NCBI RefSeq assembly: GCF_026571515.1
Contig: NW_026864036.1
Coordinates: forward strand, 1 to 64,000
Reading direction: 5' to 3'
DNA length: 64,000 bases
Source of the DNA: Ruditapes philippinarum
Lineage: Eukaryota
Of this stretch, positions 1-44,134 are shown in pieces. The notes beneath the pieces are model-generated. The model was not told the origin of the DNA and did not search any database. It worked only from the letters and a program-made list of their open reading frames with translations. Every line of letters begins with the position of its first letter. Position 1 is the stretch's first letter. Position numbers and translations under genes: made by a program.

Positions 1-229
1 TAAATATCTGAAATGTCAGTAAAATCAAAGAATCTAAATTATGTGATAATGTTTTCATCAGTGATATTTCGTGTAATACAAAATGAATAATTAACTAATT
101 GAAATTTAAATGATAATTTAAAAATAATATTTTGTCAATCTCTTTGATCTTTACCTCAACCCTGAATGGATTAATGGATGATTTTTGACAAATTAACAGA
201 AATTAGAAGTGCAAAACCTCTAAGTCGGT

Positions 230-720
230 TCGTATTGTTCTCAATATTGAAGAAGCGTGACAATACGTTTACAACAAAAGCAAGGATTTTTGAAAAAGGC
301 AGATATACTCAGCATATTTTCTATATTTATAGCTCACTAATCGAACATATAGAATCATTTAAATTGACCTTGGAATTACTCTCTTTAAAAATAGAAATTG
401 GTTTAGAACGCAGAACAGAATATCTCAACATACCACAATCGCTTTGCATAACATGTTTTAAGTATTTAAAAATGTATAGCTTTTGACTAATCAGAAATGT
501 TAATTGTTTGATTTTCTAGTCGAGCCCATTTTGAATATTAATTTGGAGGTTTTGGAAATGCACGATGCTAAAAATACAAAATTAATACATACTAATCTTT
601 TGTGCAAAGTCTTATGGGCAAAAAGAAATATTAACTTGTCAGCGCTTTATGGTGAGCTTAGTTGTTATTCGTTACATACTACTAAAAAACTTAACATGAT
701 ACAATATTGGTAAAATATAC
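230..720 (+). mobile_element. Decayed LINE (CR1/L2-like) ORF2 fragment, end of RT and downstream region
   Basis: Broken translation NTFTTKARIFEKGRYTQHIFYIYSSLIEHIESFK...LLCKVLWAKRNINLSALYGELSCYSL...IQYW resembles the KT(K)xMIFxKG...IExVxxFKYLG...GELGRxPL...IKYW pattern of invertebrate non-LTR ORF2. Second copy at ~14200-14680. Confidence 0.65.
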
Positions 721-769
721 TTAATCTTAATCATCCTTTATACACCAAGCGTTTATTTTTATTAAGGTA

Positions 770-1016
770 CGTTATTTCAGTCATTTCTGACTTATTAGAC
801 ACCTTTTGCTTGCATACAATGTACCACTCAACTCCTACCACTATGCCAGGCGGATAGAAATCGGTAACAATTCATTTTCACTACTTCGCGGCTCACGAAG
901 CGGCCATTTCGGAACGAGTCCTTTCATTCTTCAATTAACGATACCAGTGGGGCTCTAAAATTCGACTTCCCGATACGAAAGCGCACGCCTTAACCACTAT
1001 GCTAACGGTACCGGTC
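770..1016 (-). mobile_element. tRNA-derived SINE
   Basis: Minus strand reads GGTACCGTTAGCATAGTGGTTAAGGCG (A box TAGCATAGTGG). The copy at ~14720-14970 keeps a B-box-like GGTTAGAGCCC. Confidence 0.55.
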
Positions 1017-1894
1017 TGATAGAATATGAAAAGCCATCCTTAAAACAGAATAACGATACATTTTACTTCTAAGGGAGACAACTCCACAAATCATATCAAA
1101 GCTGTTTACTGTTTAATGTACTGAAGATTTGTCCTCCCCAGGTACATACATGTTTTAATATAACCATTTTCGTTCCTTAAACAGTTATTGTTATATTCTA
1201 AAAACATAACATCCATATATTCACACTATTTCATGTTTTTCTTGTAAAAGCCTACATTGTTGTAAGAAAAAGGATACAATGAATAAAACAATACTTGAAA
1301 GTTTTAAGTAGCTTGCTTCTTTCCAACCGAAATTTGACAACATCTCAGATCTTGATGAATGTTGGTTTGCATACATGTAAATATGTAGAATTTACTTCCG
1401 CAATATTATTTTGTAAAAGAAACTGTTGGTATGACGTCAAAGCCCCTCCATTTTTATCGATAAAACGGCCCGTTTTATTTTAATTTTCATGAGATGTTCT
1501 AAATCTAAATTTAATAATGTTCAGTAGACGTATGCCTTTACATTGATGTCTTTCTTTTATCTTTGCCGAATATACTGTGATTCTACGGCTAATTTCCCAC
1601 TTTTTTTGCGTACAAATCCGTTGAAAAATATCGCACATCATCGCAATAACAATTGTGAAATAAAAAAATCAAAACGGTAATTTTTGCTATAATATTTTAA
1701 CATGTTGTGATGTAGAGATTGAAAGTATTTATGCAATAAAATCATAGGGTCAAATTGTAAGATATTTTGCTATTACTTTTTAAAACACATTTACATTAAT
1801 TTCTTGTATTTCTTTGAAAATAATACTTTTAAACATTACGATGATATACTTTCTTTTCTCCACTCTATCACAAAGAACACAAATGCAAATAATA

Positions 1895-3360
1895 ATCAAA
1901 GCACAGAAGGCGCTGAATTTGTTTGGGTCTCAGAATTGCAGGTTGTGAGATTATATGTTTAGTGCCACCAATGCTTTCCAGCGTTTTAATTGAAGTAAAT
2001 TGGCTATTAGACTAATTGCAACACTGATATTCAATCCAATGTTTATTTGACTTTAACAATTTAAAAAAATGAGTAACCTTTACTGGGATTTGAACTCCAG
2101 ACCTCTCGCTTCCTAAGCGAGCCCGAAAACCCTTCAGCCACGGTGAATTTATATGTGAACGGCCTGAAGAAAACCATATTATTCTAAATTAGGGCTTGTA
2201 ACGACTTTAACTGTTGTTTAACACAGATGTAAATAATCCTGGAGCTTACTATAAGCATGTATATTTATAAAGAATCAAACGGCTGCAAGTTCTGTGGTAT
2301 TTTCTGATCTTTGCAATCTAAATCGTACTGTATATCTCATAATCTGTATGCATTTTCCTGTATAAGTTTATTTTTATGTATTATAATTCCTTTTGTAAGG
2401 CACCAGAGTTTGATACATACGGAATTCTGCATAACTAGAGTTGCATCAAAAATCATTTATGTTCTTTTTTTACGACAGCCACACTTTATCTTTGTATATC
2501 ATGGCTACTTCCTTAACAAAAACACTTAAAAAAAAGAATTTAACAAAAAATAATTTTCCTCGTCTGGGATTCGAACTCGAGACCTCTCACTCACGAGGCG
2601 AGCGCGTTACCACTGTACCACGGAGAAGTTATATACATTGTGTCTGAATAATATCAAGTCATTCTAAATTTCGAACTTCCATTGCAGTTCGGGTTTGTAA
2701 TCCTTATTAATTTCGTGGTATTTTGTTCAGGGTAAACCTGTTGTTTATAATTGAAGTAAATATTTTAGCAAAAATCCTCTCGCCCAAACGGTCCGGCATG
2801 TAGAATCTATATATTCCACTACTCGGTTTGTGTAGTATTCGGGAATCAACATGGCTAAAAATAGTATTTTCATTGATAAAATCATATTCATCCGCGTAAT
2901 TTGTGATTGTGCATTTATTGACCAATCTATAAGCCAACGCTATTGTTTAACTTTAAATGCGTTGTAATTTGTTGGATACTTGTAACAAAATAAAATATTT
3001 CTTTCTTTTAAATCACTAGTTTTTAGCTGTTTTGAGAACTACTTGTTGTTAGGTTTGTAGTAAACTTCTGTGTCAGAGATTGAATGTCCGCTTTGTATTT
3101 AGTTATTTTCGATCAGAAAATACAATAAAACAATATTAGAAATTTTGACCATTCGGGAATTACTTTGCTTGAAAATTGATGCGCCTGTCTTTGACCATCT
3201 TAACGCAGTGATCTCCCCTGAATTTTTCGGCTTAAGTTTACATACAAAAGGGAAGTAACCGCTCCAAAAAAGTGGACTACTTTCGGCATTTGCAATTAAC
3301 AACATTAGACTCTGAAATTTCGCTACCATTATTTGTTTGGTCTGACGACCCAAACAAATA
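1895..3360 (-). mobile_element. Non-autonomous Helentron-like element (HINE/DINE-1 type), short copy
   Basis: Absent from the paralogous sites at ~15835 and ~38328. Subterminal inverted repeats TTTGTTTGGGTC/GACCCAAACAAA, a terminal stem-loop (3332-3358), a short hairpin AGCGC-CTTCT-GTGCT at the other end, and an A/T-run target with no clear TSD. Longer copy at 7382-9834. Confidence 0.7.
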
Positions 3361-4454: not shown

Positions 4455-6693
4455 TCATATCATAAGGTCTAAAACTGATTTACAAACATTTTCCCATGTT
4501 GTTTTCATTTTGTATTCACCGTTTTCAAATGTCCACACAATCCTTCTTCCCTTTGGGTTACCTTTTCTCATTGTTGGGGGGCATCATTTTGTTCCACTTG
4601 TTTAATAAACCAAAAAATTGGTTTTCCCTTTTATAACCCCTTGCTCAACTCACTCTACAATAAAACTTTTCAAAGTTTTTCCCCATCCAATTAAAAAAAG
4701 ACCTTTGCAAGCGTCTAACGTTTCATTTTGAAATGAAAAATCGAAATGTCCCTCACCTGTACAAAATAATTCCTTTCAACTCTTCATCAACCCGGGAAAA
4801 TTTTATTCAAATGAAAAGTAAAAATATGCGTTTCAAATCCCCCATCTTCTTGTAAAGGCAAGAAAAAAAACCCCAAAATTCCCATATTTAAACCATCCCC
4901 CTGACGAAAAAAAATTTTAATTAAAATTTGCTCTTTTTTGAAACCCTTTTCCCTATGCTTTTTCGAAAAATAAAATATCAGAAGTGAAATTACAAGAATT
5001 AGTGAAACACATCCCGCCAAAATGCTTGTTGCAGTAATAATAACCTGCCTTCGACAAATCAACTTGACTTTCTTGACAGTCTCTTGTGTTATTATTTCTG
5101 CTTCATCCTTATCATTGTAACAAATCAGTTGCTGTGAATGAAGATCAACAAGATTCGTTGATGTCAGCCAAACGAGAAATGATAGTTCTTTGCATTCTGA
5201 ACACGAAATGGGATTTGCTTTTAAAATAACCATGTTTTTACGGATGTCGGAAGCATATCCAAATGAAATGCTATTCAAGTTATTAATAGACAGTTGGTCT
5301 AAGACATGAATATTGTTTCCATATAGATTAAGCACAGATAGTCTAGACAATTCAGTCAAAGTAATGTGAACTTGATCTAATATGTTACCCGATAAATCGA
5401 TAATTTCGATATTCCTGTTATTCTCGAATATTTCATCGGAAGTTTATTTGAACTATTTTTTGACATGTTAATGTTTTTTAAATTTCTGAGACCTGAAAAT
5501 AACGTTTCAAACAACCCTAAACTCCCTCGGGACATTTTCACCAGCTCATTGCTTGACAAGTCTAATGTCTCCAGATTTGGAAAGCATGACAAAAAGTTTG
5601 GATGTAAAAACTGCATACCATTTTCAGATAAATCCATGCGCCTGAATGATGAAAATTTGAAATTCTCGCAAATGACATTTACATCAAGCCACCTTAAATT
5701 GTTTTGCCTCATGATCAATTCTTTTGTGAAGGTAGAAGGATTTACGTCTACGGTAAAATTGGCACTTTTGATCCAAATTGACGAAACGTGAGGAAAAATA
5801 CCGCTCGCATTTAAAATTTCAGGAGTTAAAAATAGTTTGACGCCTTCCTGATTAGAAAGTTTAGAAAAACTAGTATTTGTATTCTCTATCACAAGTCTGC
5901 CTGGTGGAATATGAAATACCTTCCTCGGAAGATTTACGAAACTCAAATCAAGAAATTTAATGCGTTTCATGTCGCCTTGCTCTAAATAAGTAGATATGGA
6001 GAAAGTAAAAGTACTATATGATGCATCAATGACCTCCAAGAAGGCTAATCGTTTAAAAACGGCAGTCAAATTTATTGTTTTTATATCAGTACTACTCACA
6101 TCTAAATAATAAATTTTCTTTGACTGAAGTACCTCCATGAGTTGGTCATCAATAGACAACGGTTGTGAATCACGAGAACAGTTTGATAATATCAATTTAT
6201 TTAATTCCGGCAACTTATCAGATCCATTCAGAGCAGGAATTAAATAATTCAATGTAAATCTAACACTCCTGCTTAAATCCAGAACGCCTACGTCTTTAAC
6301 GCTAAGAAAAGTGTTCGGATTCATATAGAATGTGCCTTCCATATGCAATCTTAATTCTTTCAATTCGTCCAGACCATTAAAACAGTTATCTTGTAAAACC
6401 AATTGACCTACTCTAGATGGTAAGTCAACATTGATCTCTAGAAGTTTTACTTTATTCCAAGAAAAGTCAATGAACGTAGACTTGTTCAGATACATGTTAC
6501 CCACCAGGCTCAAACTCAAATGCACTGTCGTAACTCCAACTGGGAGAGTCTTCGGTATAAAGTTACAAGTGAATGTTTCATTGTTATCTTCAACACATTT
6601 GGTCTTCGTCAAATCTAATTGAGAAAATCCGTTAGTGTATGCCATTAATTCCATTAACACTAAAATGTAGGAAACATATTTAATAGTCATCAT
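4455..6693 (-). CDS. TLR: Toll-like receptor copy 1 (signal peptide-LRR-LRRCT-TM-TIR, intronless); apparent frameshifts probably sequencing errors
   Basis: ORFs 5377-6693 and 4787-5359 give a signal peptide, LxxLxLxxN repeats, LRRCT NPISCSEC..C..C and a TM helix. The frameshift at ~5431 is one missing T in a T-run relative to copy 2. The TIR region to the stop at 4455 is homologous to copy 3 but lies in homopolymer-corrupted sequence. Confidence 0.85.
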
Positions 6694-6834
6694 TTTTATG
6701 CCTTTTGTTGTTTTGTTGTTGTATCTTTTTACTTAGTGTATACCATATCAAAGCTCTCTTTGTAAATACTGCTTGAATTATCCAAGTAAGGTTTTAAATA
6801 CATTGCGATTTTAACTTCATGAAACCCAATCCAC

Positions 6835-6845
6835 GGAAAAACCCC
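6835..6845 (-). promoter_or_regulatory. Candidate NF-kB/Rel site upstream of TLR copy 1
   Basis: GGGGTTTTTCC on the minus strand ~140 bp upstream of the ATG. The aligned position in copy 3 has AGGGCTTTCC (41580-41589). Confidence 0.3.
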
Positions 6846-7381
6846 ACATTTTTGCACTTATGGTCACATCTCATCGTCATCTATAGAGCTTCACCTATAG
6901 CTATAAATATCATCGTGTACAATCTCTCAGAATTTAAACTAATGGTGGTCAAGTGTTAAAAACAAAATATTACCTCGATCAATATATCATATTATTACCC
7001 TTCAGATTTTTTTCCGCCTTTTTGATTGGATATTGATTACCCAAAATAAATTGATATTTCGAGCCAGACGGGTAATATACACACTAAATTTCCCCGTTTG
7101 GCACCCCACGTTGTAAACAACATGTGTTGTTGCGATGCGCGTACGGTTCTATTTTACGCAGCGTAAATTCCGATTTACAAGCACTTTTAAATTGTAAAAT
7201 AATAAATATTAACCAAAATAGAGCAATGATACATATTCTCACCAGTATTGAAAACAAATATGACCTCGTGAAAGCTTGATATTAATTACAAAAAGTGCGT
7301 TCAACAGACGACTCCATTTTTCTTGTTTACATTTGTTAGGCACGATCACAGGAAATTGACATTATATAAGCGAATAATAAA

Positions 7382-9834
7382 ATCAAAGCACAGAAGGCGC
7401 TGAATTTGTTTGGGTCTCAGAATGTAATAAAGGTACAGGTTGTGAGATTATATGTATAGTGCCACCAATGCTTTCCAGCGTTTTAATTGTAGTAAATTGG
7501 CTATAAGACTAATTGCAACACTGATATTCAATCCAATGTTTATTTGACTTAAACAATTTGAAATAGAAATGAGTTGTCTTTACTTGGATTTGAACTCCAG
7601 ACCTCTCGCTTCCTAAGCGAGCGCGAAAACCCTTCAGCCACGGTGAATTTATATGTGAACGGCCTGAAGTAAACCATATTATTCTAAATTAGGGCATGTA
7701 ACGACTTTAACTGTTGTTTAACACAGATGTAAATAATTCTGCGTTTAGGATAATCATTTAGTGACGCGGTGGTCAAGTCCACATTAACGGTGTAAAACAG
7801 TTATCATATTGTGTTTAATATCTTAAGTCAAGCAGGCTTGCCATATAAATTAAAATATCGACAAATCTACCAACTGTCGGCGTAACGCAGTAGGTAAAGT
7901 TGTGTGGTAAATTTTTAGTTACATATCAATGCAAGACAGCCAGGTTCGGTCCCAATTTCTTTTGTATAATTATCAATGGATTAAGAATTTCTTTTTTTCT
8001 TGTAAAGATTATTAGCGCTGTGTTATTTTCTATTAACTTCTCATTTCACTTTTGTTTTTAAATGTTACTATATCTAGCAAGTTGGTGCAACCTGATACGG
8101 AATACATACATGTACATAAATTGTTTCAACTATAGTTAAGTTGACAATGGTTTGACAACTTGTGCGGCTCAAACTCATGATAAAATTTAATTTGTATGGC
8201 ATCCTAGTGACTTAACCAACTTTGCCATCGAGACTTTTCAAATTTATTTCTGATTTTGAATCATATTCACTTCTAAATACCCTGTTTTACCTATTCAAAC
8301 AAAGATTGAAAACTTTTGTGTACACAAAAAATGCAACGTCACTCTCACATTATCATAGCGGCACAGTACTATAAGCATATTTTATAAAGAATCAAAGGGC
8401 TGCAAGTTCTGTGGTATTTTCTGATCTTTTCAATCTAAATCGTACTGAAAATCTGTATGTATTTTCCTGTATAAATTTATTTTTATGTATTATAATTCAT
8501 TTTGCAAGGCACCAAAGTTTGATACATACGGAATTCTGCATAACTATAGTTGCATCAAAATATCATTTATGTTCATTTTTTACGACAGCTACACTTTATC
8601 CTTGCATATCATGGCTACTTCCTTAACAAAGTCACTTAAAAAAGAATTAAAAAAAATGTTTCCTCGACTGGGACTTGAACTCCAGACCTCTCACTCACTA
8701 AGCGAGCGCGTTACCCATGCACCACGGAGAAGTTATACAAACAATGTCTGAATAACATCAAGTGATTCTAAATTTCATTCCATTGCATTTCGGGTTTGTA
8801 ATCGTTATTAATTTCGAGATATTTTTTTCAGGATAAACCTGTTGTTTAAAATTGAAGTTAATAATTTAGCGAAAATCTTCTCGCCCAAACAGTCCGACAT
8901 GTAGAATCTATATATTTCACTACTCGGTTTGGGTAGTATCATAGGAACTCGAGAACGGGACCGCAGATTGCGGCGTATATTTTCAATCGTGTAACGGTTT
9001 TGAAAAACGTTTCTGCTACATCTAAATATCTTTATTTAGTATTATCCGAGTGTATGGACTCAAAAAATATATTATCAATTGAACCCAATCCGTCTCTTTT
9101 AAAACTGGTCAAATTTTACGGTATATTCAATATACCGTAAATTTGACTGATTTTTAAATTAGAAGATTATAATAAATTGAGATTAGATAATTAAAGACCA
9201 CCCGCTCGCATAATATGAAAAGATATTCAAAGGTCGGACAAACTTTATGTAAAGCCGGTAAGGATTCGGATTTATGCACCGCAATATGCAGTCCTGTTCC
9301 AGAGTTCCTATGGACAGTATTTGGTAATCGACATCGCTAAAAATAGTATTTTCATTGATAAAATCATATTCGTCCGCGTAATTTGTGATTGTGCATTTAT
9401 TGGCAATTCTATAAGCCAACGCTATTTTCAAACTTTGAATGTGTTGTAATTAGTTGGATACTTGTAACAAAATAAAAATATTTCTTTCTTTTAAATCGCT
9501 AGTTTTAAGCTGTTCTGAGAACTACTTGTTGTTAGGTTTGTCGTAAACTTCTGTGTCAGAGATTGAATGTCCGCTTTGTATTTACTTATTTTCGATCAGA
9601 AAAAACAATAAAACAATATTTGAAATCTTCGACCATTCGGGAATTATTTTGCTTGAAAATTAATGTGCCTGTCTTTGACCATCTTTACGCAGTGATCTCC
9701 CCTGAATTATTCAGCGTTAGTGAACATATAAAGGGAAGTCACCGCTTCAAAAAAGTGGACTACTTTCGGCATTTGCAATTAACAACATTAGACTCTGAAA
9801 TTTCGCTACCATTACTTGACGACCCAAACAAATA
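7382..9834 (-). mobile_element. Non-autonomous Helentron-like element, long copy
   Basis: Same ends as 1895-3360 (ATCAAAGCACAGAAGGCGCTG...GACGACCCAAACAAATA). It carries an extra ~630-bp internal segment (7740-8366) and a nested MITE. Confidence 0.7.
8940..9312. mobile_element. MITE with ~40-bp TIRs nested in the Helentron-like element
   Basis: Left end CATAGGAACTCGAGAACGGGACCGCAGATTGCGG versus reverse complement of the right end CATAGGAACTCTGGAACAGGACTGCATATTGCGG. Degenerate 8-bp TSD GGTAGTAT/GACAGTAT, internal palindrome 9098-9158, absent from the short copy (~2838). Confidence 0.75.
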
Positions 9835-9840
9835 AAAGAC

Positions 9841-10743: not shown

Positions 10744-11476
10744 AATAAAATGTCAATTTCATGTGGTACGATATAAAATAGGTCATGTAATGATGTGACG
10801 TCATGTTGCGGTGAAGGGCCAAGATAAAATATCTCCCCAGCCGATAGGCTAGACAGGTAATATATCCTCGTATATCAATTCAAAATCAAAATAACATATA
10901 CTATTTTTTTTAATATGCATTTATTTTTAAATTTATTTATTTAGTTGCTTGGTTTTGTCGATGGTATGTGGTTATGGTCGAATGTTTTGTCACTAAAAAT
11001 GATATAACATTAATACATTGGTTGGAGTCGATGTGCTGTATATGCATCAGACTAAAAGAAACAACAACTTTCAGTTGTGTTTTGTAATGGTTGCAGAAGA
11101 TTCGAATGAAATTTTTACATTTTTATATAAGAATTATCGACGCTACTGTATATCAATATTGATTTAAACAGATAGTTAAAGAAGTAGTGAATTTAAGCTA
11201 TATAGTATATTAATCGAGGTCATATTCCGTTTAAAACTGACTGATAACCTGTTTTAATTGTTTTGAAAAGTATTTGTTCTTTTGATAATTCAAACTGACT
11301 GACTCACAAACTTTTGGCGGAATTGCAAAGATTGCATATAGCCATGAGTATGAATGTGATGGTTCGATGTGCATTTACTTGCCTAAAGTAACAATTATAT
11401 TTAAATCTAATTTCTATATATCAATCATTATTTACACAGAGGGTTTTGATATAACAAAAATGAAGAATAAAATGAA

Positions 11477-12160
11477 ATGGTATCTATTAAATATGTTTGT
11501 TATGTTTATTTGTTAAAGGGACTCCATTTGATGAAGATCGAACCCATAACTTGTGTTCATTCGCCAATTCCGTTTTTTCTGGTCTTTCTTAATTAAAGCA
11601 GGGAATAAAATAAACACTGAATAAGTTCAGGTCTTAATGGATCGGACCATTGTAAAAATTGAATTAATTAATATTTTGGATCGTGCAATTGCAAAGGCGT
11701 CGGATTCGAGCCGCGTCATGTACACACCAAGAAATTTGCGCTATATTGCTTTACATCACACAGACGTAAATGGGTGTCTAGCTTCAGTGACGCCAGGAAG
11801 GTCGATAGATAGATTTTAACAATTTATGACCAAGGGTTATGCTGCTAAGTTAGCATGTAACTTAGAATGTAACTTAGAATATTAAATGCAATAACTTAAT
11901 AAAAACATCACATCTAATTCCTTAAATATCGGTCAATAAATAAATTCAAGATGAAAAAACAAAACAACAAAAAACATGATCTTTGCTCACATAAATATAT
12001 TTCAAATGGGGTTTATAGATCTGAATACAATCAAGGATAAAAAACTTTGTCTAAAACAGAAGGTATGCAACACTTAATTTTCAGAACCAAAGTTGGTGAT
12101 TTTAGACCAAGTTAATCGGCTTATATGCTTTTGTAACGGTAAATCCGATTGGCCACTTGG
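11477..12160 (+). pseudogene. Inverted, decayed TLR 5'/ectodomain relic (unit 1)
   Basis: MVSIKYVCYVYLL matches MMTIKYVSYILLL; PRNLRYIALHHTDVNG matches PKKIKYVDVSKTDLKG. Upstream sequence (11206-11460) matches the reverse complement of the TLR upstream regions. Confidence 0.65.
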
Positions 12161-12970
12161 AACAGCCGATTTTCTTTTCATTTTGGTTTTGGAAAAATTC
12201 CGGCAATCGAACTGCGTTATGAAGCCCCCTGTGGTGTTATTTAATTTGTTAGAGTTCAAGTGACACAGCTGTTACTTTAGGTGCGACAAAAGACTATTAA
12301 AAGTACATAAAATGGAGTTTCAGGAACCTTTTCATTTTTAAACAATAAACAAATAACAAAAAAAAATATTACTTCTTTTGGCATTTTGTCATCATTTACT
12401 TGAAAATTGAAAAAAAAACATATCGTACTTTTAAAGCAGAAAATTGACAAAGACAAGGGTTTCAGTAAATTCAAGTTATACATAAATTCCTACAAAAATA
12501 TTTTTATTATATCTGTATGAAAGAAAGAAATTCATAGTGGAAAATATATAAAGAAAAAACCAGCTCAGTATGCCAAACACTATACCACATTCTAGTTAAA
12601 TCTTGACAATAGTTAATCTTCATGTCTTCGCAAATTGGGCTTGAGTTCGAGTCTAACACAAGTCAAGCTTACAACAATATAACAGGGTCTTTCAAGTTCT
12701 ATTTGAAAGACCTTGAATATAGCAACAATAATACAATATAGTTTATTCAACAACAAACATTTTACAATGTTCTAAGTATACAAGGTGTACAGATGCAAAA
12801 CATCAGTATCAATACCTGAAGATAATTAAATTTTATTAAAAGAAGAATGATCAATCATTTAAATATGAATTAAATAACCATAAATCAAGCTACATAAGTT
12901 TTTTTTTATACATGCCGCACATAAAGTGTGACTCTCATGTCCTTGTTTGTTATATATTATAAACAGATCG

Positions 12971-13590
12971 AAACAAGAGCTTTCACAGAATGTGACAAAT
13001 GCCCATGACGGATTCTAGTTATAAACTACCTATTACATGTATAGTGTGGTGGTAAAAAATGACAAAGTTCGAACCCCAGCAGTGACCATTAAGTAAGACA
13101 AAAAAACCTGGGTCTTGTTCACAACACATTGTCCATCTATGGTGACTTTATATTTTGAAATGAAAATTGAAACTTTCATGTATATGGAAGTTACAGTGCG
13201 GACACAACAATCATCATTTATATGTATATAACATAAATATTGAAAAAAGTTTAAACCCCAGCAGTGACCTTGAACTAAGGCGTAGGAACGCGGGTCTTAA
13301 GGGCAACACATGATACATTTATGATTATTTCATATGTGAAATAAAAAATATAATCCTTTCATGCATGTTAGTTTCAGAGCAGGCACGACTACTTCTGTCT
13401 ATATGTATGTTAACATTAAAATTGAAAAAGTTTGAATTGAATTCCCACAGTGACAAGAAAATGGTACATTGTGAAAGAAAAATTACAATACTTCCATGCA
13501 TACTGAAGTTTCTGAGCGGACACGACCACCGCCGTCTATATTTATATCACATAAAAATGAGAGTTTGAACCCCAACAGTGACCTTGTCAA
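12971..13590 (+). repeat. Degenerate repeat element with ~130-190-bp internal tandem units (HINE/pearl-like)
   Basis: Starts AACAAGAGCTTTCACAGAATGTGACAAATGCCC. The motif GAACCCCAGCAGTGACC recurs imperfectly at ~13071, 13254, 13440 and 13567. Confidence 0.45.
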
Positions 13591-13619
13591 ATCACGATAA
13601 AAAGGACAAAGAAAATGGT

Positions 13620-14030
13620 GTCCCAATTTGATTCATATTACATAACTACACAACCTCTTTTTTAATATTGTTACATCTTCCTGTTTCAATATTTAAGCTA
13701 TCTGATTCGATACTTCTTTTCATGAATGATATTATGGTATTTTTCAAGTTAAATTTAGCGCACGAATGAAGTCGATTCGAAATATTTTCTTCCTCATACC
13801 AATGTTACACGTATGAGTCATAAGTCATTTTTTAAATTTCATCAAACAAAATACCGATTTCAAATTGGTGTCCACATACATGGCTAAATCCATGGCTATC
13901 TAGTATATTCTTGATTTGGTACGCCCAATTATTTCTTTTGTAATGTCTATTAAAAACAGTGTCATGTTTAAATATCTGAAATGTCAGTAAAATCAAAGAA
14001 TCTAAATTCTGTGATAATGTTTTCATCAGT
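13620..14030 (-). mobile_element. Decayed LINE ORF2 C-terminal fragment
   Basis: NNWAYQIKNILDSHGFSHV and SLNIETGRCNNI resemble the NW...ILxxxGFxxxW and LxIETGR motifs near the 3' end of invertebrate LINE ORF2. Confidence 0.55.
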
Positions 14031-15835: not shown

Positions 15836-15882
15836 AAAATGAATTCAGGACATTATTTGAATTAAAGGTACCTAGTTCTTAA

Positions 15883-26885: not shown

Positions 26886-26952
26886 AATTGAATAGAGACA
26901 TTTTAGATTATTCATTTTGTTTTAAAAACATTTGGGGTTTTTCGGGAGGGGG

Positions 26953-28128: not shown

Positions 28129-28415
28129 AGGGACACTGATGTTGCCTGACACGATAGGACTTGATTAATGTCCTATTTTATGAACTTTTGTTCATTCGCC
28201 AATTCTGTTTTTTCCAAAATAATTTTTCTTATTGTGAAAAATAAGCGTTGCAACGATTTTCATTCCAATAGGGCTAAAATAGCGCATAAAACATTACTTT
28301 CATTTCTTTTTACATTTCCTAATTTTTTGCATATTATGATGTTTAAGTTGCCCCTATTGATTATTGTAAGAAACAAATTTTTCTTCAGTTTTATTTTTAC
28401 CTTTGTGGAGTTTCT
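28129..28415. mobile_element. Kolobok-like MITE (TTAA TSD, AGG termini)
   Basis: TTAA|AGGGACAC...GGAGTTTCT|TTAA; removing it restores the TLR signal-peptide sequence. Same family as 62465-62784 (opposite orientation) and a truncated copy at 11517-11580. Confidence 0.7.
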
Positions 28416-28639
28416 TTAATAGTTTTAATGATATATACTAACGGGTTTTCTCAATATGATTCGACGAAGAACAAAATTTTGAAGACAACAATGAAACATT
28501 GACTTGTAACATTATACCGAAGTATTTCCAGTTGGAGTCACGAAAGTACATTTACATTTGAGTCTAGTGGGCGACGCGTATGTTAACAATTTCAGTTTAT
28601 TGACTAATCTTGGTTCCAGGTAAAACTTCTTGAGACAGT

Positions 28640-31600: not shown

Positions 31601-32642
31601 TGACCCGTAATTGACTCATCATTTACCACAATGCACCAGCTAAAAAAATAAAAATGGCTTCTAGTGTAAGTTGTTTACTGTCAACAGCTACAATTATAAG
31701 TGTTAAAAAGTGTTTTAAAAATGGAATTGATCATTCAGACTTGGCTAACATGTTTCCTAACACCCAGTTTTGATATTTCACAAATGGATTTAACAAACAT
31801 TATCACATGATTATAGAATAAACACTGATAAAGATGCAAAAAACGAGGAAAATATACATGTGGGAAAAGTGTAAACGCGGGCACATTTTAAAAAAGATGA
31901 ATGGCAAGCACTGTTTGTTTTATATGCAGGCTGGCTGGTTAATATTTATCAGACCAGAATGCATATTTAATGTATGGTGCATTGTCAAATGCTTCACAAG
32001 ATACTTGGAAATAGGATCAAATTAGGATCAAGTCTGGTGGAGTCTGCTCTAGGCCTACATGTAATATGCACAGAAATCACAAAGTAATCAGGATATATAC
32101 AGTACTGGCATTACACAAAGAATATGATTGAAGGTAAAACAACTTTAAATATGTTTTCCTATGTATAAACTGTACACTGTGAAATAAATCACTCTCAATT
32201 CAAGTCAGCTATTCATAGTTTCATGTAGATATGACATACTGGGGTTCTGGTTACAACTTACAGTATGTTTATGACCAAACAGCCAAAAAAAACTTATCAT
32301 ATTATATGAGTTTTTATGTTTTATTAGTCTATGACTCAGCTGTATTTTGCAGACAATGTACATCAGCTGATTTTCTAAGTATTTCTTATTGAAGTGGACA
32401 GTTATCGGCCATTTTGTTTTTTTGTGGAGGAATGAAAAATACTGCATTGTGGGATTAATTTTTCTTGTTAATTAGTTAACAAAATGTTAAGCACTTTAAC
32501 GCCTTGTTAACTAACACAAAATTTAACACAGCTCTGAACAACTCAAATTTTGGCATTTTGTTAGCTAACGAAAATATTAAAATTTAACAACTGTTTAGTT
32601 AATTTGTTGTTAAAGTTAACAAAAGTTTTGAACAACTGGGCC
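28640..32642. mobile_element. 4.0-kb non-autonomous TIR DNA transposon (possibly PIF/Harbinger-related)
   Basis: Perfect 27-bp TIRs GGCCCAGTTGTTCAAAACTTTTGTTAA, 3-bp TSD AGT, and GTTAA/TTAAC-rich subtermini. No transposase ORF. Confidence 0.85.
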
Positions 32643-33929
32643 AGTATGTTAAATACTTATTTATATAAATCCTAACACTTTCTTAGGCATTAATGACATG
32701 GTCTTTCTGAATTAAAGCAGGGAATAAAATTAACACTGAATGATTTAATTATAGGTCTTAATGGATCGGACAATTGTGAGAATTGAATTAATTGATGTTT
32801 TGGGATCGCGCAATTGCAAAAGGCATCGGATTCGAGCCGCGTCATGTACACTGCCAATTTCCTCGACCAAGAAATTTACTCTATATTGCTTTACGTCACA
32901 CAGACGTAAATGGGTTACTAACTTCAGTGACGCCAGGAAGGTCGATAGGTGGAGTTTAACAATTTATGACCAAGGGTTATGCTTCGCTCACTTTAAAATA
33001 TTCCAATTGGGGGTTTAAAGAGACATACAAGAATTGCTATGAATGCTTTCAAGGATCAGAAAACTTTGTCCGAAACAGAAGGTATACAACGCTAATTTAT
33101 TAGAACCAAGTGAATCAGTTACGTTAAATCTGATTGACCACTTGGACCAGCCCAGAAAAGTATAACAACACTGAAGTGAAGTACGGGGCAACTTTTTACA
33201 GCTGCCACACAGCACTTGACACCTGCTGTTGTGAAGTATAAAAATCTGGAAACAAAGTGATCACTCGGAAGCATTAATCACAAGAGAATTGCAGACTCGG
33301 TTTGATTGAGTCTGTACATGAGTCTGTACCTCCCGCGCAAAAATGTGCCTCTCGTGTGCTTGTATGTTAAACATTATAAACAGATCGAAAAACCATAACA
33401 ACAATATAGTAGAACTTATCAAAAACTGAACACACTCTATCAACTATTAATTACGCATCGATACTTTATTTGCATAGAATATAAATTTAGCTATTTTTAA
33501 TCCAAAGTAATGATAAAATAACCTTCAAATTTCTTAATATTAGGCAAGTGACAAAGGAAAAGCTGAAAATAATATTTTCCTTAAATCACAATAAAAAGGA
33601 CAATGGAAATGTTATTCCGATTCGATTTGATTCATATTACATAACTACACAACCTATCTTCCTTTTGAATATTGTTATATCTTCCTGTTTCAATATTTAA
33701 GCTATCTGACGAAGTTTTTAATTCGATACTTGTTTCGTAAATGATATTTTTAAAGGGATATTCAGGCAAAAATAATGACAAAAAATATTAAAATGATCTT
33801 TTGTACTCAACTCGCCCCTAAAATGACATTTCTAAAAAGTTTCAAGCATGAATTCTTGTTTTAAATTCTATATGTTTTTGGATTTGAAGCATAAATACAT
33901 CTATATGTGTTTGAACAAAATTTAGACGC

Positions 33930-39219: not shown

Positions 39220-41463
39220 TCATATCATAAGGTCTAAAACTGATTTACAAACATTTTCCCATGTTGTTTTCATTTTGTATTCACCGTTTTCAAATGTCCA
39301 CACAATCCTTACATTCCTTTGGTATACCTCTCTCATAGTTGGTGGCATCAGTTCTTGTTCCACTTGTTCAATAAACATCAAAATGATTGGTTTCCCTTCC
39401 ATGAGCGCATGCTCAAGCTCACCTCTACAATAAACACTTTGACAAAAGTTTTCCGAAGCTACTACAATTAAAACAGACGCTGTCGCCAAGAGTCTCCACG
39501 TCTCATTTAGAACATAGAAACCAGGTCGAAAATGTCGGTCACCTGTACAAACTAGTTCTCTATCAACTCCTGTCATCAACTGAAGATTTTCATTCAACTG
39601 ATGTAGAATATGCGTATTGACAAAGTCCTCATCTTCATTGCTGAAGGCAAGAAAAACCGCAAATTCATAGTAACCATTGCCCTGGCGTAACAAATTAATT
39701 ACATTTGCTCTATTTTGTAACCTTTTTCTATGCTTTCTTCGGATATAAAATATCAGAAGTGCAATTATTAGAATAAGTGAAATACATCCCGCCAAAATGC
39801 TTGTTGCAATAATAATAACCTGCATTCGACAAATCAACTTGACTTTCTTGACAGTCTCTTGTGTTATTATTTCTGTTTCATCCTTTTCATTGTAACAAAC
39901 CAGTTGCTGTGAATCAAAATCAACAAGATTGTTGACGTCAGCCAAACGAGAAATGATAGTTCTTTGCATTCTGAACACGAAATGGGATTTTTTTTTTAAA
40001 ATAACAATGTTTTTCCCAATGTCAGTAGCATTACCGTGTGAAATGCTATTCAAGTTATGAATAGATATTTGGTCTAAGACATGAATTTTGTTTCCATGCA
40101 GATTTAACACGGTTAATCTCGACAATTCAACCAAAGTGATGTAAACTTGATCTAATAAGTTACCCGATAAATCGATAATTTCGATATTCCTATTATTCTC
40201 GAATATTTTCTTAGGAAGTTTATTTAAACTATTCTTTGACATGTTAACTTTTTTTAAATATCTGAGACCAGAAAATAAAGTTTCAAACAACCCTATGTTC
40301 TCTTTGGACATTTTCACTAACTGATTGCTTGACGCGTCTAATTTTTGCAGATTTGGAGAGCATGACAATAAGTTTGGATGTAAAAACTGCATACCATTCT
40401 GAGATAAATCCATGCGACTGAATGATGAAAATTTAAATTTCTTACATATGACATTCATGTCAAGCCACCTTAAATTATTTTGCCTCATTATTAATTCTTT
40501 TGTGAATGTCAAAGGATTTAAATCTATTGTAAAATTGACACTTTTTATCCAAATTGACGAAACATGTGGAATGATTCCGCTCACATTTATAATTTCAGGA
40601 ATAAAAAGCCGTTTGAAGTCTTCAACATGAGGAAGACTAGATAAACTAGTATTTATATTCTCCCAATTTAAGTCTACCTGGTGGAAGATGAAATACTTTC
40701 TTCGGAAGATTCGCGAAGCTCAAATCAACAAATTTTAATGCGTTTCAGGTCGCCTTGCTCTAAATAACATGTGTTTGAAGAAACCAATATTACTGTACGA
40801 TGCGTTCACGACCTCCAAGTAGGCTAATCGTTTGAATACGGCAGTCAAATTTATTCCTTTTAGATCAGTTTTACTCACATCCACATACTTAATTTTCTTT
40901 GGCTGAAGTACTTTTATGAATTGGTCATCTATAGACAACGGTTGTATATAACGAGCACATTTTGATAATATTAATTTATTCAATTCCGGCAACTTATTAG
41001 ATCCATTAAGAGCTGGAATTAAATCATCCAATGTTAATTTTACACTCCTGCTTAAATCCAGAACGTGTAAGTTATTAATGCCAAGGAAAGTGTTAGGATT
41101 CATATCGAATGGGCATTCGACATGCAGCCTCAATTCTTTCAATTCTTTCAGACCAATAAAACAGTAATCTTGTAAAATCAAGTGACCTGCTTGTGAGGCA
41201 TTGATCTCCATAAGTTTTACTTTATTCCAAGAATATTCAATGAACGTAGACTTGTTCAGATACATGTTACCCACCAGGCTCAAATTCAAATGCACTGTCG
41301 TGACTCCAACTGGAAGAGACTTCGGTATAAAGTTACAAGTCAATGTTTCATTGTTGTCTTCAACACATTTGGTCTTCGTCGAATCATATTGAGAAAATCC
41401 GTTAGTGTATGCCATTAAAACCATTAACAATAAAATGTAGGAAACATATTTAATAGTCATCAT
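39220..41463 (-). CDS. TLR: Toll-like receptor copy 3 (~746 aa, signal peptide-LRR-LRRCT-TM-TIR, intronless)
   Basis: ORFs 40735-41463 and 39220-40584. Three +1 homopolymer-type insertions (~40767, 40738, 40663) and a compensating +1/-1 pair (~39990/39930) leave the net frame intact. Complete TIR: YEFAVFLAFS, DRHFRPG, SVYCRGEL. Confidence 0.9.
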
Positions 41464-43511
41464 TTTTGTATGTTTTTTAGTGTTTGTTTATATTAAAACC
41501 CTCTTTGTAAATACTGCTCGATATATCCAAATTATATTTAGATTCAATTGTTATTTCAATTTCACGAAAATTAATCCACGGAAAGCCCTCATATATATGC
41601 TCTTATGGTCGCATGTAATCTTTGGAAAGCTACCCTTCGGTTATAAATATCAGATGTACAAAACATATTCTCAAAATAATTTAAACTGATGGCGGTTAAG
41701 GTCGTCAGTTTAAAACGAACAATGATCTCGATCAATGTATTAAACTACTATTGAAGTATGTTAGGTCGATTGTATGTGGTTAATGTCGTATAATGACCAG
41801 TCACAATAATTAGTGCGTGAAAATCAAATTAAAAAGAAATTTTGGAACACTTCACTTAATATCGTATTTCGGTATACACCGAAGAAAGCGCTTGAATTAT
41901 TAAATATTAAGTCGAATTGTACGTTTAGACGTTTATTTAATCACTTCAAACCGATTTATAAATAATAATGAATGAAAAATGTCGGCGAGAAAAGCAATAA
42001 TTTTCTAGTTTGTGATCATTTCTACAAGCGTACTGCTCCAAATCTGGACATGTAGTGAGTTAAATCCTCATAATTAAACAAGATGCTTTCTTGTTGTTCC
42101 TCTTTTGTAGAAAAAAATATAACATATTTCTTTATAAAGATGCTTCCACCTGAAATTTGAAGGATCATAAATGCCTTTATTTTAGTATTTGTGACAAGAC
42201 AAAATGTTATAATTTAAACATTGATCTCAGACTTGTTGTAAATGCATGCTTAATAGAAGTTGTGTTTTTTTTTTTCGTAAATGGTACTCTTTTTTATCTT
42301 ACATTGATGTTTCTAAATTCCAAATTTTACCATTTTATGTTAAATTTTGAATTCTGTTTAAGCCGGTTCTTGGGAGGGGGGAGCGTGGAAGGTAACTTGC
42401 ACCTTCAAGCACCGCCCATGAACAGCCTCAATGAACACAGTTATGGCAAAATATCAAGTTAGTTTTAGTTCTTTACCTGTACACTTACTTGTACACTTGG
42501 ATTGACATCAAAGTACTTTATTATTAGTCTACAACACGTGTATGTATCAAAATGTGTGTGTGTGTGTGTGTTTAAACTGTTAAGTTGTTGTTTGGAATGG
42601 GTTTGTTTTAGCATGTTTATCATCAGTTGAACCAAAATTATCTATTATTTTCTGGTTAGAACAAGTATAGCAAAATTTGTTGAATGCTGAGAATGTATAT
42701 CAAACATGCTTTGTTAACGACAAGATTATTTAAATGATTTGTGGAAGAAATATCAAATATATTTGAGGAGAGCAATATCAGTAACGTGTTTTTGTTTCTA
42801 TTAAAAATGCGATGCTTCAACTTTTGAATCATTTTGCTTAACTTGAGAACCGCTCAAGTCGATACTAGGGGACTTGAGGAATATTGCATTTTTTCATTAT
42901 CTCTCATGTACAGACTCAATCAAACCGAATCTTGCAATTTTCATGTAATTTTGCTGTTTTTAATGCTTCCCAGTGATCACCTTTTTCTGGGTATTTGTTT
43001 ATAATTATTTGCTCTGTATGTCATTTTTGTCACAAACATATTTAAATATTTTTATATTGGTTATACCGATGTGCCTTGCATCAGACTGAGAAAAAATCTG
43101 TTCTGTCCTTTTCTGTTCTGCTATTAAGTAGTAGGTACTGAGTTGATATAAATGAGTGTGATAAATAGTGTACTTTTATATAAGAATTATTTACACTATC
43201 TATATTAATATTGATTTAAACTGATAATGAAAAGAAAAGCGAATTTAAATAACATATCTTGATTGAGGTCATATTTCGTTGTAAACTGTCTTTCATAACA
43301 TTTATCCCTTTAAATTGTTTTGAGAAGTAGATTATGTTCTTTTGATATTTGTAACTGAAGCGATTTGTAACTGAAGCATGCGGCCATTATGGCATTAAAG
43401 TGAGGGTAACATGTGCATTTAGTAACTATCAAATTTAAACCTTAATTTGATATATCAATCAGTATTTACAAAGAGAGTTTTAAGATGATAAAAGTAAAGT
43501 AGTACATAAAA

Positions 43512-44134
43512 ATGGTGACTATTAACGTGTTTCTTACGTTTTGTTGTTAATGGTACACATTAACGGATTTACGTACGATTCGGATTCGACGAAGACAACA
43601 AAACATTGACTTGCAACTTTATATACCGAAACCTCTTCCAGTATGAGTCTGGAAGAAGAAACCTATCTTAATTTTCCATTCATCGAATATTCTTAAGACA
43701 GAGCAAAACCTCTGTATGTCATTTGATTTTTACAACTGTTCGAATATACTGGAATAATTGAAAAAATTGAGACTGCATGTCAAATGCTCAATTGACAAAA
43801 ACACTAACACTTTCCTAGGCATAGTCGTTCTAGATTGAAGCAGGAGTGTAACATTTTCATTATATAATTTACAGAGTATGTCACTTGGTTTTACTAGATT
43901 ACTGTTTAATGGTCTGAAAGAATTGAGGCTGAATGCCCATTCGATATGTATCCTAACACTTTCTCCCTGGCATAAATTACGTACACGTTCTGGATTTAAG
44001 CAGGAGTGTAAAATTTACATTAAATAACCAAATTTCAGCTCTTAATGAATCTGATAGGTTGCCAGATTAATAAATTGATATTATCAAAATGTTCCCGTTA
44101 TACACAGCCGTTGTCTATTGATGACCAATTCATG
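43512..44134 (+). pseudogene. Inverted TLR relic (unit 3) with an internally duplicated LRR segment
   Basis: 43512-43871 runs from MVTIN..SYVLLLM through KLRLHVKC..NTFLG..SRSV. 43880-44134 is a second, less decayed copy: DYC..GLKELRL..PFDM.PNTF..HVLDLSRSVKFTLNN.ISALN..NKLILSKCSRYTQPLSIDDQFM. Confidence 0.85.

What the first reader, a model, noticed from the sequence alone, without database searches (positions are those of the whole stretch)
1..44134. Triplicated TLR cassette: every receptor is paired head-to-head with an inverted TLR ectodomain relic
Seen: three tandem units start at <1, 13969 and ~34648. Each has a minus-strand TLR and, upstream on the plus strand, a decayed TLR covering only the upstream region, signal peptide and first LRRs (11477-, 28085-, 43512-). 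Up to ~280 bp of upstream sequence is also mirrored (6960-6990 vs 11206-11240; 41704-41740 vs 43260-43290). Established: upstream silent segments, often inverted, act as gene-conversion donors in avian Ig and Borrelia vlsE, and LRR cassettes do so in lamprey VLR. Inference: this could be a donor-cassette system diversifying bivalve TLR ectodomains, or a source of regulatory RNA from a divergent promoter. The simpler reading is an old inverted duplication that decayed and was then amplified; frameshifts in the relics favour that.
Basis: partly seen in the sequence, partly recalled or inferred. Interest (0 to 1): 0.8.

Follow-up and report, generated by a model that had tools for sequence, protein, structure and literature searches.

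The report
Dead inverted TLR stub copied with units
In a Manila clam Toll-like receptor cluster, each gene copy faces a short, dead, back-to-front copy of its own start that was made once long ago and has since been carried along passively, so it is an ordinary genomic fossil, not a diversity generator.

Summary
The window (Ruditapes philippinarum contig C12523) holds three minus-strand TLR copies. Each faces a plus-strand fragment covering about 300 bp of upstream DNA, the start codon and up to about 170 codons, with ATGs at exactly 11477, 28085 and 43512.

The same gene and relic pair occurs on two other contigs. In total 6 of 8 copies of this TLR subfamily have a relic.

In three separate segments all old relics form one clade apart from the genes. 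They share one end point, and five of six share a dispersed-repeat insertion inside the signal-peptide codons. Open frames from the relic ATG are only 9 to 39 codons. Among those five relics, variation is spread evenly over codon positions.

No relic is closer to its own partner gene. 0 of 56 relic-gene pairs show a significant shared tract, while gene-gene pairs do. No RNA lay on relic 3 in three runs.

The donor-cassette and regulatory-RNA readings are not supported.

Caveat: all three genes look broken in this assembly, but other runs lack the five 1-bp indels of copy 3. Only copy 2 is clearly truncated.

The parts
1..1895 (.). Head of unit 1; the unit runs off the window's left end.
   Evidence: 94.5% identical to 13969-15836. 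Also matches C7291 4-776 and 25648-26384.
4456..6990 (-). TLR copy G1: ATG at 6693, plus about 300 bp of upstream DNA. In this assembly the frame breaks near 5430 and the TIR part (about 4550-4950) is scrambled.
   Evidence: ORFs; LRR_8 hit; alignment. The 5' 1.8 kb is 95-100% identical (98-100% in 10 of 12 bins) to the intact copy on C9197, while the TIR patch is 60-68% identical to every copy.
7370..9837 (+). Segment B', a direct copy of 1885-3363. It lies between G1 and its relic and is absent at the same place next to C7291 gene B.
   Evidence: Three collinear matches at 88-91%. Comparison with C7291.
11121..11700 (+). Relic R1: upstream DNA, ATG at 11477, about 14 codons, then a jump to codons ~120-170. 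The first ~90 nt are a high-copy repeat.
   Evidence: Alignments. The ORF from the ATG is 39 aa. Genome-wide hits for the repeat part.
11701..13968 (+). Unit DNA after the relic. It is shared by the units and is not TLR-like.
   Evidence: 11580-11843 matches 32699-32983 at 85%. Apart from a ~60-nt repeat it is found only on the TLR contigs.
13969..15836 (.). Head of unit 2.
18330..20269 (-). TLR copy G2, cut off at its 5' end near 20234-20250. It has no promoter, ATG or signal peptide, and carries a TAA stop at 18428 near the end of the TIR domain.
   Evidence: 613-aa ORF with LRR_8 and TIR_2; alignment. Its nearest copy changes along its length.
20232..20359 (.). Perfect fold-back at the point where G2 is cut off: 64-nt arms with no spacer.
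   Evidence: the repeat finder I1, 97% complementary.
21042..27966 (+). LTR retrotransposon (Ty3/gypsy-like) inserted between G2 and R2. It directly abuts R2's upstream DNA.
   Evidence: LTR pair 21042-21487 and 27499-27966 at 87%, K2P 0.12. Integrase_H2C2 hit at 24138-24530.
27949..28136 (+). Relic R2, piece a: upstream DNA, ATG at 28085 and about 14 codons.
28137..28415 (+). Dispersed repeat inserted within the relic's signal-peptide codons. It sits at the same site in the relics on C8204 and C7291 (two there). R1 keeps only its first few bases.
   Evidence: Alignment. Of the 37 places listed besides the query itself, 3 are the other relics and 34 lie on other contigs.
28416..28650 (+). Relic R2, piece b: codons ~13-90.
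   Evidence: 83% identical to G3 41205-41427, inverted. tblastn hit.
32640..32830 (+). Relic R2, piece c: codons ~120-170, lying after a ~4-kb insertion.
   Evidence: 79% identical to G3 40967-41105, inverted.
39220..41750 (-). TLR copy G3 (ATG at 41463) with its upstream DNA. The assembly has five 1-bp indels, near 39930, 39993, 40662, 40737 and 40766.
   Evidence: X17 contigs lack all five indels, and X2 contigs lack 39993, 40766 and part of 40737.
41751..43173 (.). Spacer between the two arms of unit 3. It holds two high-copy repeat fragments at 42206-42372 and 42874-43040.
   Evidence: Very high depth and many loose ends at those places in all four runs.
43174..43872 (+). Relic R3, old part: upstream DNA, ATG at 43512 and codons to ~148. 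It lacks the repeat insertion and is the earliest-branching relic.
   Evidence: 65% identical to G3, inverted. Trees. The ORF from the ATG is 12 aa. X2 contigs confirm the sequence.
43873..44134 (+). Relic R3, young part: a second copy of codons ~94-184. It is gene-like and repeats about 180 columns already present in the old part.
   Evidence: 78-84% identical to G1-G3 over the whole piece and 80-86% in segment iii. It nests among the genes beside G3 and G_7291C. Alignment.

Best explanation
A single ancient event copied the 5' end of a TLR gene in inverted orientation, giving a head-to-head pseudo-palindrome. The copied piece was about 300 bp of upstream DNA plus roughly the first 170 codons. 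This stub could never encode a receptor: it has no later LRRs, no membrane span and no TIR domain.

The roughly 10-kb unit of gene plus stub was then duplicated repeatedly, and the stub went along as a passenger. After the first split, which gave the unit-3 lineage, a dispersed repeat landed in the stub's signal-peptide codons. That already broken stub was then copied into at least five more units on three contigs.

Since then each stub has decayed in its own way through deletions, a 4-kb insertion, an adjacent LTR retrotransposon and an added second fragment in unit 3. Meanwhile the genes have exchanged sequence among themselves.

Shown: the anatomy, the shared lesions, the single relic clade, neutral variation among the five relics that carry the repeat, absence of gene-relic tracts in the assembled copies, and absence of RNA on relic 3 in three runs. 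Inferred: the order of events, and the duplication mechanism (fold-back or template switching).
For: 1. One origin. In ML trees of three separate segments the old relics form one clade, with UFboot support of 100, 77 and 81. All relics that reach that point lose homology to the gene at the same column, about codon 170.

2. Dead before amplification. A 279-bp dispersed repeat sits at the same site in the signal-peptide codons of R2, R_8204, R_7291B and R_7291C, and R1 keeps its first bases. ORFs from the relic ATG are 9-39 aa in 6 of 6 relics.

3. Neutral decay. Among the five relics that carry or retain the start of the repeat, variable columns per codon position are 41/131, 40/135 and 46/131 (p = 0.62). 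For the genes they are 73/212, 47/211 and 79/211 (p = 0.002). Relic-relic identity (76-88% in segment i without R3old) falls within the range of neighbouring non-coding unit DNA (72-96%).

4. Age order, from median K2P in the upstream non-coding part: gene-relic 0.51, relic-relic 0.27 (0.19 without R3old), unit-2 LTR pair 0.12.

5. No exchange with the partner gene. Partner identities in segment i are R1-G1 61%, R3old-G3 67%, R_8204-G_8204 64% and R_7291B-G_7291B 62%; only R_7291C-G_7291C (68%) is marginally that relic's best match. 0 of 56 relic-gene pairs pass Bonferroni in a permutation test of concordant runs (lowest p = 0.019), against 4 of 28 gene-gene and 4 of 21 relic-relic pairs.

6. 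A family-wide feature. Relics lie upstream of 6 of 8 gene copies of this subfamily on C12523, C7291 and C8204.

7. No RNA. Depth was 0 on 43208-43875 in X21, X23 and X17, while the G3 5' part reached about 9x in X21 and X17 contigs covered 39200-41404.
Against: With R3old included, relic variation is uneven across codon positions (55/148, 51/153, 73/150; p = 0.018). The deepest branch may therefore have been under some coding constraint, or composition may bias the count.

Gene and relic trees are not fully congruent. R_7291C groups with R_8204 while G_7291C branches early. G1 and G_8204 upstream DNA is 98% identical while R1 and R_8204 are 85% identical. This needs gene-gene homogenisation or recombination between units as an extra assumption.

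The run test is home-made and cannot detect tracts shorter than about 10 polymorphic sites. Somatic events cannot be seen in germline assemblies.

The RNA evidence is thin. Only about 4-6% of two runs was read, the tissues are unknown, gene depth was 9x or less, and no small-RNA library was examined.

Two of 8 gene copies (C7291 gene A and C9197) have no relic in the DNA I held.
Confidence: 0.85

Rival explanations
1. Donor cassette: the relics are silent templates that pass sequence into the 5' LRRs of the neighbouring TLR by gene conversion, in the germline or in haemocytes, to diversify the ectodomain.
For: The relics are partial, silent, inverted and next to a receptor gene. Sequence exchange does occur in this cluster, but between genes. 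The young piece 43873-44134 shows gene-like sequence placed beside a relic.
Against: There is one stub per gene, not an array. The stubs are 62-82% identical to the genes and interrupted by a repeat. No relic resembles its partner more than other genes, and 0 of 56 pairs have a significant tract.

Of 8 G3 variants in the mirrored part seen in other runs, 0 match only R3, 1 matches only another relic (R1) and 2 match bases also found in genes. The three R3 variants in X2 are isolated single bases on contigs that otherwise keep all relic-specific differences.

The young piece duplicates about 180 columns instead of replacing them, so it is an added fragment and not a conversion tract.
Confidence: 0.03
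2. Regulatory RNA: the relic keeps a promoter copy and drives divergent or antisense transcripts. Alternatively, gene and relic together give a hairpin RNA that is processed into small RNAs acting on the TLR family.
For: About 300 bp of upstream DNA is mirrored. On C7291 the two arms are only about 33 bp apart.
Against: Depth was 0 on 43208-43875 in two raw RNA runs and in one run that looks like RNA. The mirrored upstream DNA is only 61-69% identical to the genes and shows no more conservation than flanking DNA. The relic bodies differ by large independent deletions and insertions.
Confidence: 0.05
3. Structural side effect, compatible with the best explanation: the inverted arms have no coding or regulatory role but act as substrates for inversions and other rearrangements that reshuffle the cluster.
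For: At C7291 34442-37553 a relic plus gene pair lies in the opposite orientation to its own unit head, with the arms about 33 bp apart. G2 is cut off at a perfect 64-nt fold-back. R3 carries a second, younger fragment.
Against: The arms are now 62-82% identical, which is low for homologous recombination. The inverted unit lies at a contig end and could be an assembly error. No reads were laid there.
Confidence: 0.15
4. Assembly artefact: the relics or the triplication come from mis-joined or duplicated reads.
For: This assembly has noisy patches (G1 4550-4950, G2 flank 17500-17935) and 1-bp indels that other runs lack.
Against: The units differ by 6-18% and the relics by 12-30%, which is far more than assembly duplicates would. 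X2 contigs from another study match 42951-44011 with 0-2 differences. Relics with the same lesions occur on three contigs.
Confidence: 0.02

Closest known systems
Lineage-specific tandem expansion of bivalve TLR genes
   Same: Intronless TLR copies (LRR, membrane span, TIR) multiplied locally. A review I read in passages (PMC12521104) attributes bivalve TLR expansion mainly to tandem duplication, with diversifying selection on the ectodomain. In one search the own-genome search listed 63 matches.
   Different: Here every unit also carries a fossil inverted stub of the gene's own 5' end, which marks the units as copies of one ancestor. My two searches found no paper describing this.
Pseudogene donor systems: chicken Ig pseudo-V arrays, Borrelia vlsE silent cassettes, lamprey VLR LRR cassettes.
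   Same: Silent, partial, sometimes inverted copies sit beside a receptor gene.
   Different: Those systems have many diverse donors per expression site, and the expressed gene shows mosaic donor tracts. Here there is one repeat-interrupted stub per gene, no tracts (0 of 56 pairs) and no partner-specific similarity.
Somatically diversified FREPs of the snail Biomphalaria
   Same: This is a mollusc immune receptor family for which gene conversion has been proposed. I saw only the search listing and abstract starts (PMC3313920, PMC12074976).
   Different: It is a different protein family. The claim rests on variant transcripts and amplicons exceeding the germline copies, and no such data exist here.
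Sp185/333 immune gene clusters of the purple sea urchin
   Same: A tightly clustered, fast-evolving invertebrate immune family shaped by segmental duplication and instability. I saw only the abstract start of PMC3091723 and a reference-list entry for Oren et al. 2016.
   Different: There the duplications are linked to flanking microsatellites. Here the marker is an inverted partial gene copy.
Large palindromes with arm-to-arm conversion, such as the human Y ampliconic palindromes (recalled)
   Same: Two inverted arms around a short spacer.
   Different: Those arms stay more than 99.9% identical through ongoing conversion. Here the arms are 61-69% (non-coding) to 69-82% (coding) identical, which shows that no such homogenisation operates.

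Membership tests
Toll-like receptor (the three minus-strand genes) | Extracellular LRRs, one membrane span and a cytoplasmic TIR domain | tested here: met
   LRR_8 and TIR_2 are above the Pfam cut-off in G2 and G3, and LRR_8 in G1. They are 84-87% identical to proteins named 'toll-like receptor 4 [Ruditapes philippinarum]'. The membrane span was judged by eye from the hydrophobic run in the translations, not by a predictor.
Toll-like receptor (the three minus-strand genes) | Intact reading frame | tested here: inconclusive
   All three are broken in this assembly. X17 contigs lack all five G3 indels. The G1 5' 1.8 kb is 95-100% identical (98-100% in 10 of 12 bins) to an intact copy. G2 is structurally cut off at its 5' end.
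Gene-conversion donor cassette system | Array of several diverse silent donors per expressed gene | tested here: not met
   There is one relic per unit. tblastn finds no other TLR-like fragment in the window.
Gene-conversion donor cassette system | Mosaic tracts in the expressed gene that match a donor | tested here: not met
   0 of 56 relic-gene pairs are significant. No relic resembles its partner more than other genes. No relic-specific tract appears among the variants in four runs. Somatic tracts were not testable.
Gene-conversion donor cassette system | Donors are kept usable, with in-frame variable-region sequence | tested here: not met
   ORFs from the ATG are 9-39 aa in 6 of 6 relics. 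A shared repeat insertion and independent large deletions break them further.
Decayed inverted segmental duplicate (pseudogene fragment) amplified with its unit | All copies share one origin: monophyly and shared break points or lesions | tested here: met
   Trees, the common end column, and the common repeat insertion.
Decayed inverted segmental duplicate (pseudogene fragment) amplified with its unit | Neutral evolution | tested here: met
   Variation is even across codon positions in the five relics that carry or retain the start of the repeat (p = 0.62). It is uneven when R3old is included (p = 0.018). Divergence lies within the range of the flanking DNA.
Divergent-promoter or hairpin RNA locus | Transcription of the relic arm | tested here: not met
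   Depth was 0 on 43208-43875 in X21, X23 and X17. Sampling was shallow, and small RNA was not tested.

The most novel reading that the evidence does not exclude
In haemocytes, or in the germline at a rate too low to leave long tracts, the inverted stub pairs with the 5' end of its neighbouring TLR. It then either seeds short-patch conversion or fold-back rearrangements, or forms a hairpin transcript after immune challenge. The fossil would then have been co-opted as a cis element that speeds change or tunes expression of the first LRRs across the family. The inverted unit on C7291, the fold-back at the G2 break and the second fragment stuck to R3 would be footprints of this activity.
Probability: 0.04. 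Interest if true: 0.7.

Novelty: new member of a known kind. Interest (0 to 1): 0.25.

Why it matters
The finding gives a clean worked example of how an expanded invertebrate immune gene cluster records its own history. A dead inverted stub with shared lesions shows that at least six units on three contigs descend from one ancestral unit, and it gives a relative order of events. It also removes a tempting over-reading, that clam TLRs use a donor-cassette system like adaptive immunity. The exchange that is visible in this cluster is between the genes themselves. For annotators it flags that this assembly has 1-bp indels and noisy patches that make live TLR genes look dead.

Tried and rejected
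**TE capture.** I considered that a mobile element had captured the TLR 5' end. I rejected this because the relic-specific part matches only the TLR contigs C12523, C7291 and C8204. Only the first 72-90 nt and the 279-bp insert are dispersed repeats. The DNA after the relic is locus-specific.

**Haplotigs.** I considered that the other contigs were alternate haplotypes of the window. I rejected this as the general explanation because most collinear matches are 72-92% identical. G1 and the C9197 gene are 95-100% identical (98-100% in 10 of 12 bins) over 1.8 kb, but their 3' flanks do not match in the DNA I held, so that question stays open.

**R3 young piece as a conversion tract.** I rejected this because the piece repeats about 180 alignment columns already present in the old part.

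**Relics beside other TLR families.** I looked for inverted self-matches in loci L001-L030. None was found in 30 of 30, but the 1.5-kb flanks are too short even for the known positives L001, L004, L005 and L006, so the test has no power.

**Strand of the G3 RNA.** This could not be called. The first-mate bias differs between the two halves of the gene in X21.

**Reads at the 95% threshold.** Reads on G3 may partly come from close paralogues or alleles. X21 reads differ consistently from the window at 41304, 41349 and 41371.

**Literature.** Searches found nothing on inverted TLR stubs.

Full report
**What is there.** The window is contig C12523 of a 1.41-Gb Ruditapes philippinarum assembly. 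A protein named 'toll-like receptor 4 [Ruditapes philippinarum]' (P0001) maps at 100% to another contig of the same genome.

A self-comparison shows three direct copies of an intronless TLR on the minus strand:
- G1, ATG at 6693
- G2, 18330-20269
- G3, ATG at 41463

G1 and G3 are 82% identical, G1 and G2 82%, and G2 and G3 91%. Pfam finds LRR_8 and TIR_2. The unit heads also match: 1-1895 to 13969-15836 at 94.5%, and weakly to 35045-36039.

On the plus strand, upstream of each gene, lies a fragment that mirrors the gene's 5' end. The BLAST E-values of the mirrored matches (1e-19 to 1e-58) rule out chance.

**Anatomy of the relics.** Each relic starts about 300 bp upstream of the ATG and runs to about codon 170. 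There, all relics that reach that far lose similarity to the gene at the same alignment column and continue into unit DNA that is not TLR-like.
- R1 has lost codons ~15-105.
- R2 is in three pieces (27949-28136, 28416-28650, 32640-32830). They are separated by a 279-bp repeat and a ~4-kb insertion, and a 6.9-kb LTR retrotransposon (21042-27966) abuts its upstream end.
- R3 has an old part (43174-43872, 65% identical to G3) followed by a younger gene-like piece (43873-44134; 78-84% to G1-G3 over the whole piece, 80-86% in segment iii). The younger piece repeats codons ~94-184.

Open frames from the relic ATG are 9-39 codons in 6 of 6 relics examined. Contigs of an independent run (X2) match 42951-44011 with 0-2 differences each, so relic 3 is real DNA.

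**The pair is a family feature.** In the same genome this TLR subfamily has eight copies on four contigs. Three are in the window, three on C7291 (A broken, B intact and equal to P0001, C at the contig end), and one each on C8204 and C9197 (both intact).
- Relic DNA is found upstream of C7291-B (22058-23243).
- It is found next to C7291-C (35723-36777), in the opposite orientation and only about 33 bp from the gene's upstream DNA.
- It is found 9 kb upstream of the C8204 gene (30517-31950).

None was seen for C7291-A or within the 14 kb I held upstream of the C9197 gene. So 6 of 8 copies have a relic. The contigs are mostly 72-92% identical to the window, which makes them paralogous units and not simple haplotigs.

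**One origin, dead before amplification.** I aligned the 5' regions of eight genes and all relic pieces and built ML trees for three segments: upstream DNA plus ATG, codons 13-90, and codons 115-170.

In each tree the old relics form one clade (UFboot 100, 77, 81), with R3old branching first. The young R3 piece nests among the genes beside G3 and G_7291C.

A 279-bp insertion lies inside the signal-peptide codons at the same site in R2, R_8204, R_7291B and R_7291C. R1 keeps only its first bases, and R3old lacks it. This insert is a dispersed repeat. Besides the query itself and the three other relic copies, one search lists 34 places on other contigs.

The stub was therefore already interrupted when five of the six units were copied.

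**Neutral decay and relative age.** Within the five relics that carry or retain the start of the repeat, variable columns are spread evenly over the former codon positions (41/131, 40/135, 46/131; p = 0.62). The genes differ across positions (73/212, 47/211, 79/211; p = 0.002).

With R3old included the relic counts are uneven (55/148, 51/153, 73/150; p = 0.018). This is a point against strict neutrality on the deepest branch.

Median K2P distances in the upstream non-coding part:

| Comparison | Median K2P |
|---|---|
| gene-relic | 0.51 |
| relic-relic | 0.27 |
| relic-relic without R3old | 0.19 |
| LTR pair of the unit-2 retrotransposon | 0.12 |

The gene-gene range is 0.01-0.49. This gives an order of events:
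1. the inversion;
2. the split of the unit-3 lineage;
3. the repeat insertion;
4. amplification of the unit;
5. the LTR insertion.

The mechanism of the inversion itself (fold-back or template switching) is inferred.

**Tests of the donor-cassette reading.** No relic is clearly closer to its own partner gene than to other genes. In the upstream segment R1-G1 is 61%, R3old-G3 67%, R_8204-G_8204 64% and R_7291B-G_7291B 62%; R_7291C-G_7291C, at 68%, is marginally that relic's best match. In the coding segments most relics are closest to G3, as expected from where the relic clade joins the tree.

A permutation test of the longest run of concordant polymorphic sites gave 0 of 56 relic-gene pairs below the Bonferroni threshold (lowest p = 0.019). 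By comparison, 4 of 28 gene-gene pairs and 4 of 21 relic-relic pairs passed. The test is my own and is blind to tracts shorter than about 10 polymorphic sites.

Gene-gene exchange is visible elsewhere too. The nearest copy of G2 changes along its length. The upstream DNA of G1, G_8204 and G_9197 is 98-99% identical while their relics are about 85% identical.

I also checked variants seen in other runs. Of 8 G3 variants in the mirrored part, none matches only R3, one matches only R1, and two match bases also found in genes. The three R3 variants in X2 are isolated single bases on contigs that keep all the other relic-specific differences.

**Tests of the RNA reading.** One read-laying run covered 39200-44200 with two raw RNA runs (X21, X23), one probable DNA run (X2) and one probable RNA run (X17).

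Depth on 43208-43875 was 0 in X21, X23 and X17. On the young piece it was below 1. The G3 5' part reached about 9x in X21, and X17 contigs covered 39200-41404 and nothing further except repeats. Peaks at 42206-42372 and 42874-43040 are high-copy repeats.

This is a weak negative. Only 4-6% of the raw runs was read, the tissues are unknown, and small RNAs were not sampled.

**State of the receptors.** In this assembly all three genes are broken. The picture is less clear than that suggests.
- G3: X17 contigs lack all five 1-bp indels, and one 437-nt X17 contig is identical to the window. X2 lacks three of the indels wholly or in part.
- G1: it is 95-100% identical (98-100% in 10 of 12 bins) to the intact C9197 gene over 1.8 kb, then drops to 60-68% against every copy in a homopolymer-rich patch. 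This looks like assembly noise.
- G2: it is truly cut off. Similarity to the other genes stops near 20234, beside a perfect 64-nt fold-back, and it has no promoter or signal peptide.

So 'frameshifts' alone are weak evidence in this assembly. The case for dead relics rests on large shared lesions and on X2's confirmation of R3.

**Comparison with what is known.** Tandem duplication is the accepted driver of bivalve TLR expansion (PMC12521104, passages read). Two full-text searches found no paper on inverted TLR stubs or TLR gene conversion in bivalves.

Against donor-cassette systems (features recalled), this locus fails on the number of donors, on donor integrity and on tracts. Against conversion-maintained palindromes (recalled), the low arm identity shows there is no ongoing homogenisation. 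It is best filed as a decayed inverted segmental duplicate carried along by unit amplification. That makes it a new instance of a known kind.

**Verdict.** Interest is low to moderate (0.25). What remains open is somatic or short-patch exchange, and a possible role of the inverted arms in rearrangements, suggested by the inverted unit on C7291. I give the co-option reading about 4%.

Parts of C8204 and C9197 were therefore not seen.

Noticed in passing
window 4550-4950 and 17500-17935: Homopolymer-rich patches. G1's TIR region is 60-68% identical to every other copy, while the rest of G1 is 95-100% identical to the C9197 gene. A similar smeared patch lies 3' of G2. These look like local assembly noise, not decay.
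   Followed up: partly
window 39930, 39993, 40662, 40737, 40766: Five 1-bp indels break G3 in the assembly. All five are absent from X17 contigs, and three are absent wholly or in part from X2 contigs. G3 may be intact in nature.
   Followed up: partly
window 20232-20359: A perfect fold-back (64-nt arms, 97% complementary, no spacer) lies exactly where G2 loses similarity to the other genes. It may be a fold-back rearrangement junction, an element end or a chimeric-read artefact.
   Followed up: no
window 21042-27966: A Ty3/gypsy-like LTR retrotransposon with LTRs at 21042-21487 and 27499-27966 (87% identical, K2P 0.12). It has an integrase zinc-binding domain at 24138-24530 and a SCAN-like gag piece at 23024-23290.
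   Followed up: partly
window 15879-17204: An internally repeated ~1.3-kb element (15879-16071 matches 16572-16763; 16066-16450 matches 16822-17204, 97-99%). It lies 3' of G2 here but immediately upstream of the genes on C8204 and C9197, at the same site. It may be mobile.
   Followed up: no
window 1885-3363 and 7370-9837; 9844-10152 and 10396-10731: Direct repeats at about 90% flank G1. The second copy sits between G1 and its relic and is absent at that place next to C7291 gene B. An 80% inverted repeat follows it.
   Followed up: no
L034 (C7291 30001-37553), contig coordinates 33240-37553: A relic plus gene pair in the opposite orientation to its own unit head, with the two arms only about 33 bp apart, at the contig end. 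It is either a real inversion or an assembly error.
   Followed up: no
window 18180-20260 (G2): The nearest copy changes along the gene: G1-like near the 5' break, then G3-like, with stretches closest to C7291-B or C8204. This agrees with another first-reader note that G2 is a patchwork.
   Followed up: partly
window 44416-44656: An element that matches itself in both orientations and occurs twice on C9197 (27156-27396 and 40355-40583, 83-93% identical). It lies just past the end of the TLR cluster.
   Followed up: no
window 42206-42372 and 42874-43040: Very high depth with many loose ends in RNA and DNA runs. These are fragments of abundant, transcribed repeats in the spacer of unit 3.
   Followed up: no
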